This document shows, in pieces, positions 6,991 to 35,776 of a stretch of DNA of 49,019 bases. The DNA comes from Bigelowiella natans CCMP2755 (Eukaryota > Protista > Cercozoa): NCBI GenBank assembly GCA_000320545.1, contig ADNK01000986.1, positions 1 to 49,019 of the forward strand, in the 5' to 3' direction. The translations under genes were made by a program, and so were the position numbers. Below the pieces are notes generated by a model. It was not told the origin of the DNA. It searched no databases and saw only the letters and a list, made by a program, of their open reading frames with translations. Every line of letters begins with the position of its first letter. The first letter of the stretch is position 1.

Positions 6991-8577
6991 GACATACTTT
7001 TCCGTTTTCCAGCCGACCGACGAGTTATCCGACATTCGCTGGGTATGTTGGAGAAGGCTTTCCCACATCCGAATACAACGGCCCAAGAACAGGATACCCA
7101 ACTTTCTTTGTTGAGAGAACCAGTGCAACGCGCTTTCCTACCCCCTACCCTGGCGTGACAAGCCGGCCTTCATCGGGGTATCCTACGGTAATGAGAATAT
7201 GCTGCTGTTCCTATGCGCTTGTGGTGAGCAGAAGTGTGAGTTAGCCCATTCTTGTTACCATCGAAGTTGTTCCCTATCCCATCGTCTTCTTCCCTCCCTC
7301 TGCTTGTTGCTGATGTTGTTGTTGTTGTAGAAATACCCGACTGGGTTCTGCCCAACACGGTACCCAACACGGTACCCAACACGGTACCCAACGCTGTACC
7401 CGACATCCTATCCAACTCGTTACCCAACCCGATATCCGACACCGTTTGGAGGTTTGCCTTGCCAGCAGAATTGAACCTGATTTGTTGTACTGCATGTATG
7501 ATATGAACACACATCCCCCCCTCCCCCCTCTCCTTTACAGCTTCATCGAGACCGTCTGTATCTCCCACCGGTTATCCGACCCGATATCCTAGCCCATATC
7601 CGACTTCGTGGCCTACCCACTTCCCAACACGTAACTAGATACAAAGATGCAAGTTTACAGTCACCAGGGGAGGAGGAGGAGGAGGAGGAGGGGGGGGGGG
7701 GGGGGGGGAGGGGAGGAGGAGAAAGCACGTGTAGAAAGACAGTGTTTAGTTGAAAAATAACAAGAGGATTATCATATGAGCGAGATACTTTGAGGAATGA
7801 CTGCTTTGCTGAATCAATCAGCAAAGAGGACATAGCTGCTTGCTTGGAACAATATGCATGAAAATACACCGCACCAATAAACGGTCTGAACCCTACGTTG
7901 CAGCATTCCCCACCACAAATTCTCCAACTCCGAAACCCAGTTTAACGTCGGAATCAGTAAACTTCACGGCCCCTTCAAATGGCGGTAAAATCCCTGTCCA
8001 GCAGGTAGGTTTCTGATGACAACGCCATTGACGACGACGATGATAATAAATACTACTATTATTAACAAATGCTCTTGCACCTATATCTTGCTAGGCTTGG
8101 ATATATTCCTTCTCTGCCTCATCGCCGTCGTCGCATGCTTCTTCTTCTTCTTCTTCTTCTTCTTCTTCTTCATCATCATCATTGAGAACGTGGAGAGAAG
8201 TAGCGAGTTGTGCGCTTGGTCTTGGCCAGTGTGCGGTCGTAGGGCCGACACGAGATCCATTCATTCAGCTGGATTTAGGTGAGATATTGCACTGTGCACT
8301 AGAAACAAGTCAAACTTATAATAAATCGTAACCCATGATAACGAGGGGATATGCTTCTAGTCCCCCTCCTTCCCTTCGCTTGTTATCGCTTTTCCTGAAA
8401 TGCGCTGGTGCTGGCATCGTCATTGCAACAATCACTTAGGTCACTACCGTTTCGTCGAGAAGGTGGTGCTGATATTCGCTAACGGTGGAAGTATCAATCG
8501 CCTCACGGCACGCTTGGGAACTGCAATGGGGTTTTCACCTGATGAAGGGGTCCTCGCGACTTTCGCCTGCTACTTTC

Positions 8578-29885: not shown

Positions 29886-30182
29886 GTTGGTATGAAAAAA
29901 AACAACCGTCTTGGTGCAAGTCCCATTCGCCACCGCCTCCCCACATCGGAGGGGTCTGCCTGGAAAGAAGTAAGCAGAGGTTCCAAAGCCCAACGAGTAC
30001 TAAAAAATAATAGTTGCCGCAGGCTGATGAATCCTCGCCATATTGAAATCGCGACAATAAAACACGGGACTTTAAGCCGATAAGAAAGGAACACTTTCAT
30101 GTCTTTGTCGCAAGAGAAAATCACAGGCGATTTATCGTTACGCCGCTCCTCAGCTCTCCCCACCACGTGATCAAAGATCGGC
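29886..30182. promoter_or_regulatory. Short putative bidirectional promoter
   Basis: 297 bp between divergent ATGs (29885 on -, 30183 on +); no microsatellites. Confidence 0.5.
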
Positions 30183-32031
30183 ATGGCCGGCGCGCGCCCG
30201 TACAGCCGCCTTCTTCGCCTGTGCAAAGGGTTCGTGGGGGCCGGAGTCGCATTGACAGCCGCTTGTGCCACTGTTACGGTCGCATCTGCTTCCGAGAAGA
30301 AGTCTACCATCTTCTTATCAGTTGGAGCTTCTGGTGCCGGGAAGGTGTTCCCGTGTAGTCAGAGAGAGAAGGGGGAAATTCAGGGAGATTTGTGGAAGGG
30401 ACTGGAATTTCGCGGATCGGAGCTGATAAATGTTGATGGTGTTTCAAAGCACCAGGTGATGAAAATGGTTTTGTCGGCAGGATACGCTCTTGTTGAAGGC
30501 AAAGGAGAGGCTAGGGAAAGAGGAATGCCCCGACGTCATGTTTATCAAGAGGCATCTGACGAGAGAAAAGGTCTAACAATTAAAATCCTTCTCCTGTTCA
30601 CTAGATCTACTTCGAACTTACCTGCAGCTCTCACATGACAGAAAACCACCCCGTTGGAGAAAGCTGTATCTACGTCAACATTCCTCGCCGATTCGGTTAA
30701 TGGCATGCACGCCCTCGAATGGGTATTCTTAAGCACATTCAAAGACTGCCATTACGTTTCCGTTAAGATTCCTTTGCTAAATTTGGAGAGATCCTGAGAT
30801 CATCTCTCCGCTGCGAATTGAAATTTCCCCTCTTTTCGCCGACAGGATGCTCACAACACGAAATACGCCATTCCCTCGAAGCCCGTATCACAAGCCATCA
30901 GAGCAGGTAGCTCTCAAATCGTATGTCCCAGCGTATTATTCTTTACGGCATTTCGTCTCCGAGAAAATCTGAACCGGGAGAGTATAGGATCTCTAGGCAT
31001 GCACGTGTATTTACAGTTTCGTGGTGTGCGCGTTGACAGATAGAACAGTTATGGTCAATGCATCTTGTTTATATCAGGCAAATCAATGGTGATGAACGTG
31101 TCTAGGTACATTATTAGCATTGTGCTGATCATATGCTTCCTATTACTTCGCTCGCTCTCTTTGTTAAAAATGGGGAGAAAATAATTTGCTATGTGACGAT
31201 TTGCAGATCCATCATAGATGCCGCAAGAGAGCTCTTCGGGCAGGACGCGGTGAGTGCAGTTTGCATAAGAAGACGAAGGAGAACGATCATGATAAGGAAG
31301 ATGAGAGGAAGAAGAAGATAATGTAGACAAAAGGAGACCAGAGTGAAATTGGGGGAGAACTGAAGGAGGGATGATGGAACTAGGAATCTATCTCCTGGCG
31401 ACGACAGTGATGATGACGATGATGATAATAACAATAATACCAATAATAATAATAATAATATCAAGAAATATAGCAATGATGTATAATAACGATTGTGTGA
31501 TTTTCTCTCTCTCTCTCCCTCTCTCTCTCTCTTTCTTTCTCTCAGGAAGTCATGTGTTTGCACATCACGGCGAGTAAAAAAACCCTTGCAGAGAGACTCA
31601 GAAGGCGTGGTTAGTGCTGCATTAATCACATCGGCCAGACAACACGCATCGTAGCAACATCTTTCCGACCTTCTTCTCAATTATGCGCTTTTTTAAATTG
31701 AGGGGAATTACTCCCACCCGTCCTCCCTCGCCCTCCCTCTCATCAATCTACTCGTAACCAACAGGCAGGGAGACGGATGAGCAGGTTACGGATTATTACG
31801 ACTTCACAGAGGAGCTCGATGATTATGATGATGATGATGATGATGATAAAATTTTAATGTTTATGATAGCATTCTTCCTAAGCACTTCTTCTTCTTCTTC
31901 TCCCCTCTCTCCAGATTGAGAAGAGATTAGAACGCGCAAGCAACTACAATGGGTCTGTTCGAGGTGCGGCTGACATTGAGAAGAGAGCACGCGAAAGGGA
32001 AGTTGGGAGGGAGGGAAGAAATATTGTCATA

Positions 32032-32071
<40 letters not shown>

Positions 32072-32259
32072 CTCTCCCCCCCCACTCCGCCTCCCTCCCC
32101 CCCCTCGGTTTCAAATCAAGAGCACACCACCACCATCAGGGAACCATGTTATCGAAATCAGAAACGAAGGCTCTATTGAGGAGGGGGTAGGCCCGCAAGG
32201 CAGTGTGCAATGCATGAGTGGCACGGTGGACGACGACGACGGCGATGAGAAAGAGAGAA

Positions 32260-32302
<43 letters not shown>

Positions 32303-32729
32303 CGGGCATGATGATGATAATGTTGTTGATGATGATGATGATGGGTACCGATTTGCTTTGTTCATATGCGCTATTCTAGGTGGATATGGTCGTTGGAGCA
32401 TTGAAGGGCGATATGCAGTAATAACATGCTCTCCGATGATATATATAACATGCTGCGAGATAGGATAGATATTAATATATCACATCTTGCCTCCGCCCTC
32501 CTTCTCCTCCTCCTCCTCCCTCTGGGTAATAAACGCTTGCTGCTGACAACAATGGTGGAAGGTACGCCCTTTGGCTGGTCCCGAAGAAAGGCGAGACGTT
32601 CCACACGGAGGCGCGATTTCAGATAGAGAAGATCGCTCAGGAGAAGGTGTTGTCCTACTGGTGATAGCGGGAAAATTGGGAGCATGAACTTGCCCGCGTG
32701 CCCTTTTCTTTGGTGGTGTCTTAGTATTA

Positions 32730-32805
<76 letters not shown>

Positions 32806-34523
32806 TTAACTGTATGGTTGTGTGGCTTAATTTCGCACCGAAGTTATATATCTCTGTCATCATCCTTCCCCTTTACTCCTCCCCCCCCCTCCCCCCCCTC
32901 CCCTCCTGATCCTAGTCGAGTCATCCCTTCGAGCCTCACGTGACCATTGGGAATTTGTTCAGAGCCTCTCAGCTAGAAGTAGGAATAAAAACATCATGAG
33001 ACGAGATACGATGAAGAATGTGCGCGCGTTTCGTGTTGTATTTTTGCCCTCACGAGAGCGTGGAAGTGATGCACCGCGTCCTCACCACAAGCCTTTTTTA
33101 TGATTTAAATTTAGGCAATTTCCATCGCCAAAGTTGCAGCTGAAGCCATAGGTCGTGTCTGATATCTTATCACCTCCTCGTTGCATCTTTTCAATATTTC
33201 GAGCAAGAGTTATTCACATCCATTCTGAGTGCGTGTGTCAACAACAGAGGCGCCGGTGCGGATCTCCCCAACGGGAATGAGCGCTGAGGCGGGCACACGC
33301 TTTCGAGCCTTTGTGAGGAGGAGTTGCGATTGTGATCGGAATGATGATGACGACGACGATGTTTGATGATGATGATGATAATGGTAGCGACAACAACGCT
33401 GATTCAATGATAGAAATCATATCTCATAAACTTTTTTTGAGTCTCTCTCATTCCCCCCCCACCCCCTTCCTCCTCCTCCTCCTCCTCCCCCTCCTCGGAA
33501 CGGCAGGTATTAGAAGCGTCTCCGACGTACGCCCTGAGGTAAGCACAATTCGCTACGCATAGGAAAGATAGGAGGACAAAGCAAGTGTAGTAATAATCAG
33601 GGAGGGGGTGAGTGAGTGGGTGCTGATGATGATGAAATAATGTGAGCGTTCTGACCCAACTCGATACTTATTTCGCATTAATTCTTGCTTTAGTCTTTGA
33701 TTATGTGTTCATCCTTCCTGACACATAGATTTTTCCTCTCCTTCTTTTTGTTGCTACCATTTCTCCCCTTTTTCTCTCTCGCTCTCTCTCTCTCTCTCCC
33801 TCCCTCAATCACGTTCTCCTCATCTTTAAGGCAAGCGTGTTGCACACTCCGCCAGATCACGAGTCAGGCAGATGCGAAGAAGGAGCGGAGGACAGTAAGT
33901 GCTCACAATTCAAAAGATTTATCTCTGAATAGTCAGTGGGGTTTCTCCTTCATTCTTCGACTCCTTCTTCTTCTTCTCTTCCTCCTTCCCCTCCCCAATG
34001 TCCACACGATGTATACTGGTTCCCATCCCTTCATTATTAGGTGGAACGTGAAGTGCAGAATACATACAAGCCCCATCTCTCTCTCCTGTACGACATAAAA
34101 TAATAGATAACAGTATATTCCAATCAGAATCAGAGTCACACAGCCATAGTCAGTACCATAATGATACATGTGTGCAAATACTGCGATCACTATACGCTAT
34201 CCTATGGTAATGGCATCATTAGCAGACGCTCTCGCACACACGCGGAAAGGCTATTGTGTGGCCTCTGCAGAAAAATGTCGATGATAATGATGATGTTGAT
34301 GATGATGATGATGACGGTTTTGTGGTTATTTATCGGTGCTTTTCTCCTGTGCAACACTCTCTAGATATGGCGAGTACGATGCGAAGACTTTGCAGAAGCT
34401 GAAAGACGAGTACGAGCCGATCATAGGTGCCTCCTACATGGCAGCTGGGTAGTTGTAATGGTAGTGTGCGAATTATATCGATCCTTCTCCTCCTCATTAT
34501 CGTCATCGTTACTGCCATTATCT

Positions 34524-34555
<32 letters not shown>

Positions 34556-35086
34556 TACCACCACCACGACTAGCACGAACATTTTATTCATCGTCGTTAT
34601 CGTCGTCATCATCTCGATTTTCTAGCTTCAAAGCGGAGGAGCTGGCTCTGGTGCAGTGCACAGTGCGATCACATCAGTGTTGGACCGAGGTACATATCGG
34701 CAGAAGCCATGGGTTGATTCCCATGGCTAGATGGTGGTGGGAGGACAAGATGGTGATGGTGTGAAATCTGCAACATGTGCATTCATTCGCGCGACAACAC
34801 TGAGATATGAACTGTATCTTAACATCACTGACCGTGTTCGAAGACTCGGCCATGCTCAGAATATAACTGCCGCTTTAGCGAAAATGCAGAAGCTTCAGTA
34901 TGTGGGCGTGATTGTTGATGCTTCGTTGCTGCTGCTGCTGCTGCTGCATTTGCTATCATCGCCTAAATGTTCATTGATTATCAGGTGGCAAGATTTCCAA
35001 TTAAGCACAGCAAGCCTCCCCCCGGAACTGGGGACAACAGCATTAGGAAAAAACGGTGGAAGGGACTCTTCAGCCTATTCTCCTAA
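30183..35086 (+). CDS. phnN: Fusion of a PhnN-like ribose-1,5-bisphosphate phosphokinase and a 2H cyclic phosphodiesterase (CPDase), with N-terminal presequence; ~21 exons
   Basis: PhnN part: VGASGAGK|DTLL..FIKRHLTR..ALEW|DAHNTKYAIP..G|KSMVMNVSR|..LHITAS..LAERLRRRG|RETDEQ|IEKRLERA..IRNEGSIEEG. CPDase part: Q|YALWLVP..|PFEPHVTI..FRAF..YKPHLSLL|YG..W. Both 2H HxT/S motifs are present (~32935, ~34075). Stop TAA at 35084-35086. Confidence 0.88.
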
Positions 35087-35776
35087 GTGTGAATTCTCTC
35101 GCGTGCTATACGTGTGACAGATGCGTGTAGTGCGCACCGAAGCATGCAGCTACACAGTAGCTCACGCCATTGAACACAAGCAAGCGATACAATCATCATT
35201 AGGCATGTACATGCGAGTTATAAGGCATGCATTTGAATGTTTTGAGGCGATATACATCATCATGCGAAGTAACGGACCCATCCCTTCATTTGCGATTGTT
35301 CGAAACTTGTATTAGCTCTACCAGAGGCTAGTCTTAATGCAACGTTCATGATGTTGTCAGTACTGACATTTTCCGGCGGCTGGTGTAGGTGACATAACCG
35401 CGCGTAGTGTAACATGGACATGTCAACCTTTAATTCTCGCTAGCGGACTGATGCGCGCGACGCACACATCTAGACGTGTACTCCGTTTGGCAGTAGCAGC
35501 AACTCGCAGATAGCTACCATACAAAGATCCACACGACCACAATGTGCTTCCTATTATGACTTTCTATAAATATCGCAACAACAAACAACAATGAAGCCTG
35601 TGCATTTCTATGTAAACATCCAACATTGGCCATCATTGCCGCATAACTAGATGTAAATATCTTGACTCTCATAGCTAGTGCAATGCACAGCTCGAACACA
35701 TATTAAGAGTTTTGATAGCACTTAAATTTGTTGTTGCCTGACGGTCTTATTCGAATGCCGATGATTGTCACCAAGC

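What the first reader, a model, noticed from the sequence alone, without database searches (positions are those of the whole stretch)
30183..35086. Eukaryotic PhnN + 2H cyclic phosphodiesterase fusion: possible cyclic-ribose-phosphate to PRPP salvage enzyme
Seen: an intron-rich gene with PhnN-type motifs (GASGAGKDT, ALEWDAH..YAIP, NVSR, ITA, RL..RGRE) spliced in frame to a CPDase (YALWLVP, PHVT, PHLS). The CPDase exon has no in-frame ATG of its own. Established: in the bacterial C-P lyase pathway, 5-phosphoribose 1,2-cyclic phosphate is opened by PhnP (a 2H protein, DUF1045, is the proposed substitute in some operons), and PhnN phosphorylates the resulting ribose 1,5-bisphosphate to PRPP. Eukaryotic 2H CPDases (yeast Cpd1, plant CPDase) open ADP-ribose 1'',2''-cyclic phosphate made by Tpt1. 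Inference: the fusion performs two consecutive steps, recycling cyclic ribose phosphates from Tpt1/NAD chemistry, phosphonate metabolism or ingested bacteria into PRPP. No other phn gene is in the window.
Basis: partly seen in the sequence, partly recalled or inferred. Interest (0 to 1): 0.82.

Follow-up and report, generated by a model that had tools for sequence, protein, structure and literature searches.

The report
PhnN kinase fused to cyclic phosphodiesterase
This alga makes one protein joining a bacterial-type sugar-phosphate kinase (PhnN) to a cyclic-phosphate-opening enzyme; marine protists of several kinds share the fusion, which probably turns ribose cyclic phosphates back into the nucleotide precursor PRPP, though no one has tested this.

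Summary
Window 30183-35086 (+) holds a 21-exon, all GT-AG gene of Bigelowiella natans. A 1529-nt transcript contig (L010) maps to the window in 21 blocks. Its 441-aa ORF (P0002) contains every exon peptide in order, including the junction GDMQ|YALWLVP across intron 32418-32561.

- **Kinase half:** the N-terminal half is PhnN-like, not guanylate kinase (TIGR02322 134.8 bits against 46.8). It scores under the equivalog cut-off of 156 and lies in a distinct clade.
- **Phosphodiesterase half:** the C-terminal half is a CPDase-type 2H enzyme (PF07823 47 bits; fold match to Arabidopsis Appr>p CPDase; both HxT/S motifs invariant). It is not DUF1045.
- **Distribution:** the fusion is not unique. At least 18 sequence clusters span the junction, including Picozoa, a choanoflagellate and MMETSP protists.
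- **Related fusions:** one lineage adds an ADP-ribosyltransferase-like DUF4291 domain. Bacteria independently fuse PhnN to another 2H family, DUF1045.

The most likely function is 5-phosphoribosyl 1,2-cyclic phosphate to ribose 1,5-bisphosphate to PRPP. The cyclic substrate could come from spontaneous PRPP decay or from NAD/Tpt1 chemistry. This is inferred, not shown.

I found no paper describing the fusion, and no earlier scan note covers it. JGI's ab initio model splits it. I rate it a new variant of known kinds, of moderate to high interest.

The parts
30168..35274 (+). Transcribed span covered by cDNA contig L010 (5' UTR at least 15 nt, 3' UTR at least 188 nt)
   Evidence: blastn of L010 against the window gives 21 collinear blocks at 97-100% identity
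30183..35086 (+). Coding region: 21 exons, 441 codons plus TAA. Exons: 30183-30344, 30481-30570, 30642-30722, 30846-30906, 31078-31105, 31207-31249, 31546-31609, 31765-31784, 31915-31963, 32140-32186, 32380-32417, 32562-32646, 32916-32978, 33115-33151, 33248-33312, 33507-33538, 33831-33894, 34041-34087, 34365-34448, 34626-34689, 34985-35086
   Evidence: Exon table with phases and GT-AG sites; each exon peptide found in order in P0002
30183..30296 (+). N-terminal extension, residues 1-38: basic stretch then an Ala/Val/Gly-rich hydrophobic segment (GFVGAGVALTAACATVTVASA). Candidate signal peptide, signal anchor or organelle presequence
   Evidence: Hydropathy maximum 1.9 over 15 residues; pLDDT below 50 for residues 1-29; similar hydrophobic N-termini in 7 of 14 full-length relatives
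30303..32417 (+). PhnN-like P-loop kinase half (residues about 41-228, exons 1-11)
   Evidence: TIGR02322 134.8 bits, E 2.6e-39, residues 43-224; guanylate-kinase fold, TM by target 0.70-0.76
30324..30486 (+). Walker A motif G48-A-S-G-A-G-K54|D55-T56, split by intron 1 (30345-30480)
   Evidence: Direct reading; G48, G51, A52, G53, K54 and T56 invariant in 13 fused proteins
32418..32561 (+). Intron 11, the junction intron (GTAATA...AAG). If it were retained, the frame would read CAG TAA (stop at 32419-32421) and give a PhnN-only protein, as in JGI model 72469
   Evidence: Spliced out in cDNA L010; JGI ab initio model P0001 ends at ...GDMQ
32562..35086 (+). CPDase-type 2H phosphoesterase half (residues 228-441, exons 12-21)
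   Evidence: PF07823 47 bits against a cut-off of 21, residues 227-399; Foldseek 1FSI/1JH6 TM by target 0.83-0.85, E about 1e-9
32937..32945 (+). First 2H motif H264-V-T266 (exon 13)
   Evidence: H264 and T266 invariant in 13 fused proteins
34074..34082 (+). Second 2H motif H355-L-S357 (exon 18)
   Evidence: H355 and S357 invariant in 13 fused proteins

Best explanation
The gene encodes one 441-aa bifunctional enzyme that most likely recycles a ribose 1,2-cyclic phosphate into PRPP in two consecutive steps. Step 1 (inferred): the C-terminal CPDase-type 2H domain, using H264-x-T266 and H355-x-S357, hydrolyses the 1,2-cyclic phosphate of 5-phosphoribosyl 1,2-cyclic phosphate (PRcP) and leaves the 1-phosphate, giving ribose 1,5-bisphosphate. 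[quoted passage not shown] Step 2 (inferred): the N-terminal PhnN-like P-loop kinase transfers the gamma-phosphate of ATP onto that 1-phosphate, giving PRPP. [quoted passage not shown] An N-terminal hydrophobic segment probably tethers or targets the protein. Shown here: the fusion, the family assignments and the conservation of both active sites. Inferred: the substrates, the direction of flux and the location.
For: One mRNA joins both halves. The kinase half matches PhnN far better than guanylate kinase (134.8 against 46.8 bits) and sits inside the PhnN family, separated from Gmk by a branch with 100% support. The C half passes the Pfam CPDase threshold, and its best 2H structural match is the Arabidopsis Appr>p phosphodiesterase. 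The AF2 model is confident and treats the two domains as one body (pLDDT 88.8, pTM 0.84). The fusion has no linker and is conserved, with Walker A and both HxT/S motifs invariant, in at least 18 clusters including Picozoa, a choanoflagellate and MMETSP protists. The same pairing of PhnN with a 2H enzyme arose independently in bacteria with another 2H family, seen as DUF1045-PhnN fusions (P0032 and P0099; P0206 and P0252; an Atlas cluster of 79 members). It is also seen as a PhnN/DUF1045 neighbour pair outside a C-P lyase operon (L013). In the literature, DUF1045 flanks phnN in 86% of cases (PMC3266647). The PhnP and PhnN chemistry is established (PMC3463581). PRPP decays spontaneously to PRcP, and a Nudix enzyme converts ADPR-cyclic-phosphate to PRcP (bioRxiv 10.1101/2024.02.11.579819). 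One eukaryotic lineage fuses an ART-like DUF4291 domain in front of the same two domains (PMC12522546), and B. natans has a separate DUF4291 gene.
Against: There is no biochemical datum for any member. The kinase scores below the PhnN equivalog cut-off (134.8 against 156). It belongs to a separate clade in which the bacterial ITR....GGEDH motif is replaced by ITR...K.TDLE (TPLE in this protein), so the phosphate acceptor may not be ribose 1,5-bisphosphate. Characterised CPDases act on Appr>p and nucleoside 2',3'-cyclic phosphates; activity on PRcP is untested. If the N-terminal hydrophobic segment is a cleaved signal peptide, both domains would sit in the secretory pathway, an odd place for PRPP synthesis. 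Six-frame searches found no Tpt1 or PhnJ in the genome, but the same kind of search also missed this very gene, so those negatives say little.
Confidence: 0.55

Rival explanations
1. The enzyme works on ADP-ribose derivatives without removing AMP. [quoted passage not shown] The PhnN-like kinase then phosphorylates that to ADP-ribose 1''-pyrophosphate (ADPR-PP), which a NAMPT/Namat-like enzyme could turn straight back into NAD+ with nicotinamide.
For: Known CPDases use Appr>p, and the best structural match is that enzyme. ADPR-PP is a real metabolite that a Namat enzyme converts to NAD+ in phages, and it decays to ADPR-cyclic phosphate. An ART-like DUF4291 domain is fused to the same two domains in one lineage. 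DUF4291 neighbourhoods are enriched in Nudix, Macro and Tpt1 genes. The kinase clade differs from bacterial PhnN in the presumed acceptor motif.
Against: No PhnN relative is known to accept an ADP-ribosyl substrate. The bacterial 2H-PhnN pairs sit in phosphonate operons, where the substrate is PRcP. No Namat-like partner was sought or found here.
Confidence: 0.15
2. The two domains act on unrelated substrates and are fused only for co-expression or co-location. For example, the 2H domain would clear nucleoside 2',3'-cyclic phosphates from RNA turnover, while the kinase salvages ribose 1,5-bisphosphate formed by phosphomutases or nucleotide phosphorylases.
For: Arabidopsis CPDase also hydrolyses nucleoside 2',3'-cyclic phosphates (established knowledge). 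PhnN-like kinases are also fused to a phosphomannomutase (P0031) and to thymidine/AMP-phosphorylase-like enzymes (P0205, P0208, P0215). Those fusions point to sources of ribose 1,5-bisphosphate that need no cyclic phosphate.
Against: A linker-free junction kept in very distant eukaryotes, and the independent recurrence of 2H + PhnN in bacteria, are what consecutive steps predict rather than chance co-location.
Confidence: 0.17
3. It is an RNA-end healing enzyme (5'-kinase plus 2',3'-cyclic phosphodiesterase) like the kinase-CPD module of fungal and plant tRNA ligase Trl1.
For: It has the same order of a P-loop kinase followed by a 2H phosphoesterase. There is a weak hit to AAA_33, the clan that holds polynucleotide kinases (22.7 bits, below cut-off).
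Against: The tRNA-ligase kinase and CPD Pfam families gave no hit at E <= 10. The kinase has the PhnN-specific motifs and fold of the guanylate-kinase/PhnN group, whose members phosphorylate a phosphate and not a 5'-OH.
Confidence: 0.05
4. There are two neighbouring genes, and the joined transcript is an assembly chimera or a read-through.
For: JGI's ab initio model (P0001) stops at the TAA at 32419. Only one transcript contig was found.
Against: The CPDase exon has no start codon. The cDNA removes the 144-nt intron precisely and in frame. More than 16 homologues from other organisms show the same junction, some as single uninterrupted ORFs on genomic contigs. P0001 also breaks the P-loop with a mis-spliced intron 1.
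Confidence: 0.01

Closest known systems
Bacterial PhnN, ribose 1,5-bisphosphate phosphokinase (PRPP-forming; TIGR02322, E. coli b4094)
   Same: It shares the P-loop GxxGxGKD[ST]LL and the motifs W.AH...YGIP, NVSR, ITA and RL..RGRE. It is the best-scoring family (134.8 bits), with 31-40% identity to alphaproteobacterial PhnN, and both proteins fall inside one clade far from guanylate kinase.
   Different: It scores below the equivalog cut-off of 156 bits. It forms a separate clade in which GGEDH is replaced by K-x-T-D-L-E. It is encoded in an intron-rich eukaryotic nuclear gene with no C-P lyase genes detected, and it is fused to a 2H enzyme.
[quoted passage not shown]
   Same: It has two HxT/S motifs, passes the Pfam gathering threshold, and matches the fold with TM 0.83-0.85 by target.
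   Different: Only about 18% sequence identity to the Arabidopsis enzyme. It has no start codon of its own and always sits as the C-terminal half of a kinase fusion in this family.
Bacterial DUF1045 (PF06299/TIGR03223) next to or fused with phnN; PhnP as the canonical PRcP phosphodiesterase
   Same: It shows the same logic of a 2H phosphoesterase coupled to PhnN. Fusions exist (P0032, P0099, P0206, P0252), as does a neighbour pair (L013).
   Different: The domain order is opposite (DUF1045 is N-terminal). It is a different 2H family, with no Pfam hit and hhalign probability of 0.6%. PhnP is a metallo-beta-lactamase-fold enzyme and is unrelated.
Kinase-CPD healing module of tRNA ligase Trl1
   Same: A P-loop kinase followed by a 2H cyclic phosphodiesterase in one chain.
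   Different: It has a different kinase family (a polynucleotide 5'-OH kinase) and a different CPD family. Neither gave a hit here.

Membership tests
PhnN (TIGR02322, ribose 1,5-bisphosphokinase) | Scores over the curated equivalog cut-off (156 bits) | tested here: not met
   134.8 bits, E 2.6e-39, residues 43-224 covering model positions 3-177 of 179. It is the best family by far but lies under the cut-off.
PhnN (TIGR02322, ribose 1,5-bisphosphokinase) | Closer to PhnN than to guanylate kinase | tested here: met
   PhnN 134.8 bits against guanylate kinase 46.8 bits. In the tree the PhnN family is separated from E. coli and B. natans Gmk by a branch with SH-aLRT 100. B. natans has its own true Gmk on contig C2990.
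PhnN (TIGR02322, ribose 1,5-bisphosphokinase) | Family motifs: Walker A GxxGxGKD[ST]LL, W.AH..YGIP, NVSR, ITA, RGRE | tested here: met
   All are present in P0002 and conserved in the fused family.
PhnN (TIGR02322, ribose 1,5-bisphosphokinase) | ITR....GGE[DN]H motif of bacterial PhnN (presumed acceptor site) | tested here: not met
   It is replaced by LTREKKTTPLE here, and by ITR...K.TDLE in all fused relatives.
PhnN (TIGR02322, ribose 1,5-bisphosphokinase) | ATP-dependent phosphorylation of ribose 1,5-bisphosphate to PRPP | not testable with these tools
   This needs an enzyme assay.
PhnN (TIGR02322, ribose 1,5-bisphosphokinase) | Association with C-P lyase genes (phnGHIJKLM) | tested here: inconclusive
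   No Phn protein matches the window and there is no PhnJ hit in the genome. The same six-frame method also missed this gene, so the genome-wide negative is weak.
CPDase (PF07823, 2H phosphoesterase superfamily) | Two HxT/S motifs | tested here: met
   H264-V-T266 and H355-L-S357, invariant in 13 fused proteins.
CPDase (PF07823, 2H phosphoesterase superfamily) | Pfam gathering threshold | tested here: met
   47 bits against a cut-off of 21, residues 227-399, model positions 1-185 of 199. All 11 relatives scanned also pass.
CPDase (PF07823, 2H phosphoesterase superfamily) | 2H fold like Arabidopsis CPDase | tested here: met
   Foldseek 1fsi_C E 9.8e-10, TM by target 0.83; 1jh6_A TM by target 0.85, rmsd 2.6, on a model with pLDDT 88.8.
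CPDase (PF07823, 2H phosphoesterase superfamily) | [quoted passage not shown] | not testable with these tools
   This needs an enzyme assay.
DUF1045 (PF06299 / TIGR03223) | Match to the family profile | tested here: not met
   No hit at E <= 10 in Pfam or NCBIfam. hhalign of the C-half alignment against the DUF1045 halves of bacterial fusions gave probability 0.6%.
Trl1 kinase-CPD module (PF08303/PF08302) | Match to the tRNA-ligase kinase or CPD profiles | tested here: not met
   Neither is among the Pfam families at E <= 10.

The most novel reading that the evidence does not exclude
The PhnN-CPDase fusion, together with the ART-like DUF4291 domain that one lineage fuses to it and that B. natans encodes separately, is the core of an undescribed eukaryotic NAD/ADP-ribose recycling route. 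[quoted passage not shown] The product would be PRPP after a Nudix cut, or ADP-ribose 1''-pyrophosphate for direct NAD+ resynthesis, as in the phage NARP1 pathway.
Probability: 0.2. Interest if true: 0.85.

Novelty: new variant of a known kind. Interest (0 to 1): 0.62.

Why it matters
PhnN is treated as a bacterial phosphonate-pathway enzyme, and CPDase as the little-understood enzyme that clears the by-product of tRNA splicing. A conserved, linker-free fusion of the two in unrelated marine protists, none known to carry a C-P lyase (none was detectable in B. natans), says that ribose 1,2-cyclic phosphates are a real metabolite pool in eukaryotes and that cells spend ATP to bring them back to PRPP. 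Two old questions would then become directly testable with one recombinant protein. [quoted passage not shown] The second is whether the chemically labile PRPP has a repair cycle. The fusion also gives a functional handle on two domains of unknown function: bacterial DUF1045 by analogy, and DUF4291 by fusion. Finally, it corrects the public B. natans gene model.

Tried and rejected
- **Exon-by-exon family scans.** Pfam and NCBIfam scans of ten exon peptides gave nothing useful, because the exons (20-54 aa) are too short.
- **Six-frame genome searches.** Searches of the genome with TIGR02322 and PF07823 missed this gene entirely. The later negative six-frame results for Tpt1 and PhnJ are therefore not evidence of absence.
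- **E. coli PhnN against the window.** tblastn gave only noise-level hits.
- **PDB by sequence.** Only weak guanylate-kinase hits appeared, with no PhnN or CPDase entry; the fold search was needed.
- **Profile word search.** The search with the family alignment was capped at 8000 candidates and returned mostly bacterial PhnN, so it gave no organism names.
- **Literature.** Searches for PhnN with cyclic phosphodiesterase, eukaryotic phytoplankton, Micromonas, or Tpt1/KptA/ADP-ribose found no paper on a eukaryotic PhnN or on this fusion. The 2017 PRPP review is not held.
- **JGI model.** I rejected model 72469 (P0001, 265 aa). It inserts 37 residues of intron 1 into the P-loop and stops at the retained-intron TAA.
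- **DUF1045 origin.** I rejected a DUF1045 origin for the 2H half.
- **Not attempted.** The taxa of most unlabelled metagenomic relatives remain unknown.
- **Joined model.** All full-length analyses used the natural database protein P0002, which matches the exon series exactly.


Full report
**What is in the sequence**

The window is nuclear DNA of the chlorarachniophyte alga Bigelowiella natans. The only near-identical database model is named jgi/Bigna1/72469, and the assembly is 91.4 Mb in 3736 contigs.

Reading the three forward frames of 30100-35200, I built a 21-exon model from ATG 30183 to TAA 35084-35086. All 20 introns are GT-AG, the phases are consistent throughout, and the model has 441 codons.
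- GASGAGK|DT, split by intron 1
- ALEW|DAH..YAIP
- NVSR, ITA and RLRRRGRE
- YALWLVP, PHVT and PHLS

The frame upstream of YALWLVP runs '**TLAADNNGGR' with no ATG.

**How the searches were run**

The exons are 20-54 aa, and those scans gave nothing.

Instead, a word search seeded with exon 1 found JGI's ab initio model P0001 (265 aa). A search with P0001 then found P0002, a 441-aa 'complete' ORF from an MMETSP transcriptome. All full-length work used this natural database protein.

**Proof of the fusion**

- Each of my 21 exon peptides occurs in P0002 in order and contiguously, and the only gaps are the single residues encoded by split codons.
- The encoding cDNA contig (L010, 1529 nt, JGI sample 3300017192) aligns to window 30168-35274 in 21 collinear blocks at 97-100% identity.
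- An in-frame TGA lies 15 nt upstream of the ATG, so the ORF is complete at its 5' end.

JGI's model P0001 is wrong in two places. It reads 37 residues of intron 1 into the middle of the P-loop, and it stops at the TAA that follows the exon-11 donor. The gene is single-copy.

**What the halves are**

- **Kinase half (residues 43-224).** It matches NCBIfam PhnN at 134.8 bits (E 2.6e-39), against 46.8 bits for guanylate kinase. That score is under the curated equivalog cut-off of 156.
- **Phosphodiesterase half (residues 227-399).** It matches Pfam CPDase at 47 bits against a cut-off of 21. The generic 2H families score lower, and DUF1045 and the tRNA-ligase kinase/CPD families give no hit.
- **Structure.** An AlphaFold2 model built on a 46-sequence alignment is confident (mean pLDDT 88.8, pTM 0.84). 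Only residues 1-29 and the last ~19 are disordered.
- **Fold search.** Foldseek matches the N half to guanylate kinases (TM by target 0.70-0.76). No PhnN structure appeared among the matches of either PDB search. It matches the C half to the Arabidopsis Appr>p cyclic phosphodiesterase 1FSI/1JH6 (TM by target 0.83-0.85).
- **DUF1045.** A profile comparison of the C half with the DUF1045 halves of bacterial fusions shows no relationship (probability 0.6%).

**The fusion is a conserved family**

An exhaustive HMMER search of 1.84 billion representatives with P0002 found 1688 hits. The best ones cover both halves in one stretch:
- P0008 to P0018 and P0020, at 32-45% identity
- junction-spanning fragments P0021, P0024, P0029, P0035, P0087 and P0137

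That makes at least 18 clusters at 50% identity. Where a source label exists, it is eukaryotic:
- Picozoa sp. SAG22 (P0012)
- the choanoflagellate Acanthoeca spectabilis (P0258)
- MMETSP transcripts (P0172, P0259, P0260)
- a EukProt gene model (P0186)

All eleven relatives scanned pass the CPDase threshold. In the alignment of 13 fused proteins the junction has no linker (consensus AL.G.LKYSLWL.P). Walker A (G48, G51-K54, T56), H264/T266 and H355/S357 are invariant.

A maximum-likelihood tree of the kinase domain (93 rows; quick search, so moderate trust) gives two results:
- The 16 fused proteins, 11 other T-D-L-E-type rows and two rows my motif filter mislabelled form one clade of 29 rows (SH-aLRT 96) within the PhnN family.
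- The whole PhnN family is separated from E. coli and B. natans guanylate kinases (SH-aLRT 100).

The clade has its own signature, ITR...K.TDLE, in place of the bacterial ITR....GGEDH.

**Clues to function from other architectures**

1. **Independent bacterial pairing.** Bacteria repeatedly couple PhnN to another 2H family.
   - DUF1045-PhnN fusions exist: P0032 and P0099, and P0206 and P0252.
   - The Atlas's nearest cluster is a 79-member bacterial DUF1045/guanylate-kinase-like family (this is a lead only).
   - One of the closer bacterial relatives found by the first word search (P0004) lies tail-to-tail with a DUF1045 gene, outside any C-P lyase operon (L013).
   - A survey reports DUF1045 in 78 of 223 C-P lyase operons, flanking phnN in 86% of cases (PMC3266647).
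2. **A three-domain lineage.** One eukaryotic lineage makes a 659-aa protein, DUF4291-PhnN-CPDase. It has 15 members on contigs up to 8 kb, one beside an RPB2 gene called in several pieces, as introns would cause.
   - DUF4291 has been proposed on structural grounds to be ADP-ribosyltransferase-like.
   - Its neighbourhoods are enriched in Nudix, Macro, ADP-ribosyl-glycohydrolase and Tpt1 genes (PMC12522546).
   - B. natans has a separate DUF4291 gene on contig C1219.
3. **Other kinase fusions.** PhnN-like kinases are also fused to a phosphomannomutase (P0031) and to thymidine/AMP-phosphorylase-like enzymes (P0205, P0208, P0215). Enzymes of these families make or use sugar 1,x-bisphosphates.

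**Most likely mechanism**

Established chemistry:
- PhnP opens 5-phosphoribosyl 1,2-cyclic phosphate (PRcP) to ribose 1,5-bisphosphate, and PhnN phosphorylates that to PRPP (PMC3463581; E. coli annotation).
- CPDases open that cyclic phosphate to the 1''-phosphate (title of 1FSI; otherwise my own knowledge).
- PRPP decays spontaneously to PRcP, and a Nudix enzyme converts ADPR-cyclic phosphate to PRcP (bioRxiv 10.1101/2024.02.11.579819).

[quoted passage not shown] The substrate source is open.
- Spontaneous PRPP decay would make this a self-contained repair cycle. It would explain why exactly these two activities are fused, and why bacteria keep the pair outside phn operons.
- The DUF4291 fusion points instead to NAD/ADP-ribose chemistry.

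I put about 0.55 on PRcP to PRPP. I put about 0.15 on a variant that keeps the ADP moiety and makes ADPR-PP, about 0.17 on uncoupled activities, 0.05 on RNA-end healing and 0.01 on an artefact.

**Caveats**

- No member has been assayed.
- The kinase is a divergent PhnN, so its acceptor could differ.
- Residues 1-38 form a basic-then-hydrophobic segment. Seven of 14 full-length relatives carry a comparable Ala/Val-rich N-terminal segment. In the choanoflagellate protein and in P0187, basic residues follow the segment, which suggests an N-terminal anchor with the enzyme facing the cytosol. The other seven relatives have no extension.
- I could not run a targeting predictor. A cleaved signal peptide (VASA|SE) is not excluded and would be hard to reconcile with PRPP synthesis.
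- Absence of C-P lyase and Tpt1 in the genome could not be established, because six-frame searches miss genes with such short exons.

**Novelty**

I found no paper that describes a eukaryotic PhnN, or a PhnN-CPDase protein, in the library searched. Public annotations call the relatives simply 'ribose 1,5-bisphosphokinase'. Both domains belong to known families, so this is a new variant (a new, conserved domain architecture in a new biological setting) rather than a new kind of system.

Noticed in passing
window 30345-30480 and 32418-32421: The public JGI ab initio model Bigna1 72469 (P0001, 265 aa) is mis-built. It reads through most of intron 1, inserting 37 residues between GASGAGK and DTLL, and it ends at the TAA just inside intron 11, so it misses the whole CPDase half.
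   Followed up: yes
G000:C1219:68774-69210 (-), loci L016/L017: B. natans has a separate DUF4291 gene (58.9 and 33.7 bits on two exons, over the Pfam cut-off). The same domain is fused in front of PhnN-CPDase in another eukaryotic lineage (P0011, 659 aa).
   Followed up: partly
G000:C2990:47089-47544 (-), locus L001: A bona fide guanylate kinase (…HTTRGPRSGEKDGTHYHF…) is encoded in a long open frame. The alga therefore has its own Gmk besides the PhnN-like kinase.
   Followed up: partly
proteins P0031, P0205, P0208, P0215, P0127: There are other natural fusions of PhnN-like kinases: with a eukaryote-type phosphomannomutase, with thymidine/AMP-phosphorylase-like enzymes (677-691 aa, Bosea and Burkholderiaceae), and with a phosphomethylpyrimidine-kinase-like domain. 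They hint at several routes that feed ribose 1,5-bisphosphate to PhnN.
   Followed up: no
window 31400-31540, 32020-32080, 32260-32340, 32730-32805, 33340-33510, 34290-34320, 34510-34560: The introns of this gene are packed with microsatellites, (CT)n, (GT)n and (GAT/ATC)n, and with polypyrimidine runs. The whole window shows the same habit, seen as ORF translations full of 'SLSLSL', 'THTHTH' and 'RERERE'.
   Followed up: no
window 30636-30660: At the start of exon 3 a different frame reads TENHPVGES, which recalls the bacterial PhnN 'SENH' motif. The transcript uses the other frame (KTTPLEK) after acceptor 30641, so I take this as coincidence.
   Followed up: partly
locus L013 (Logan SRR26909571 contig, 4715 nt): A bacterial PhnN-like gene lies tail-to-tail and overlapping with a DUF1045 gene, next to an HD-domain gene, and no C-P lyase genes are on the contig. 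This suggests a role for the pair outside phosphonate use.
   Followed up: no
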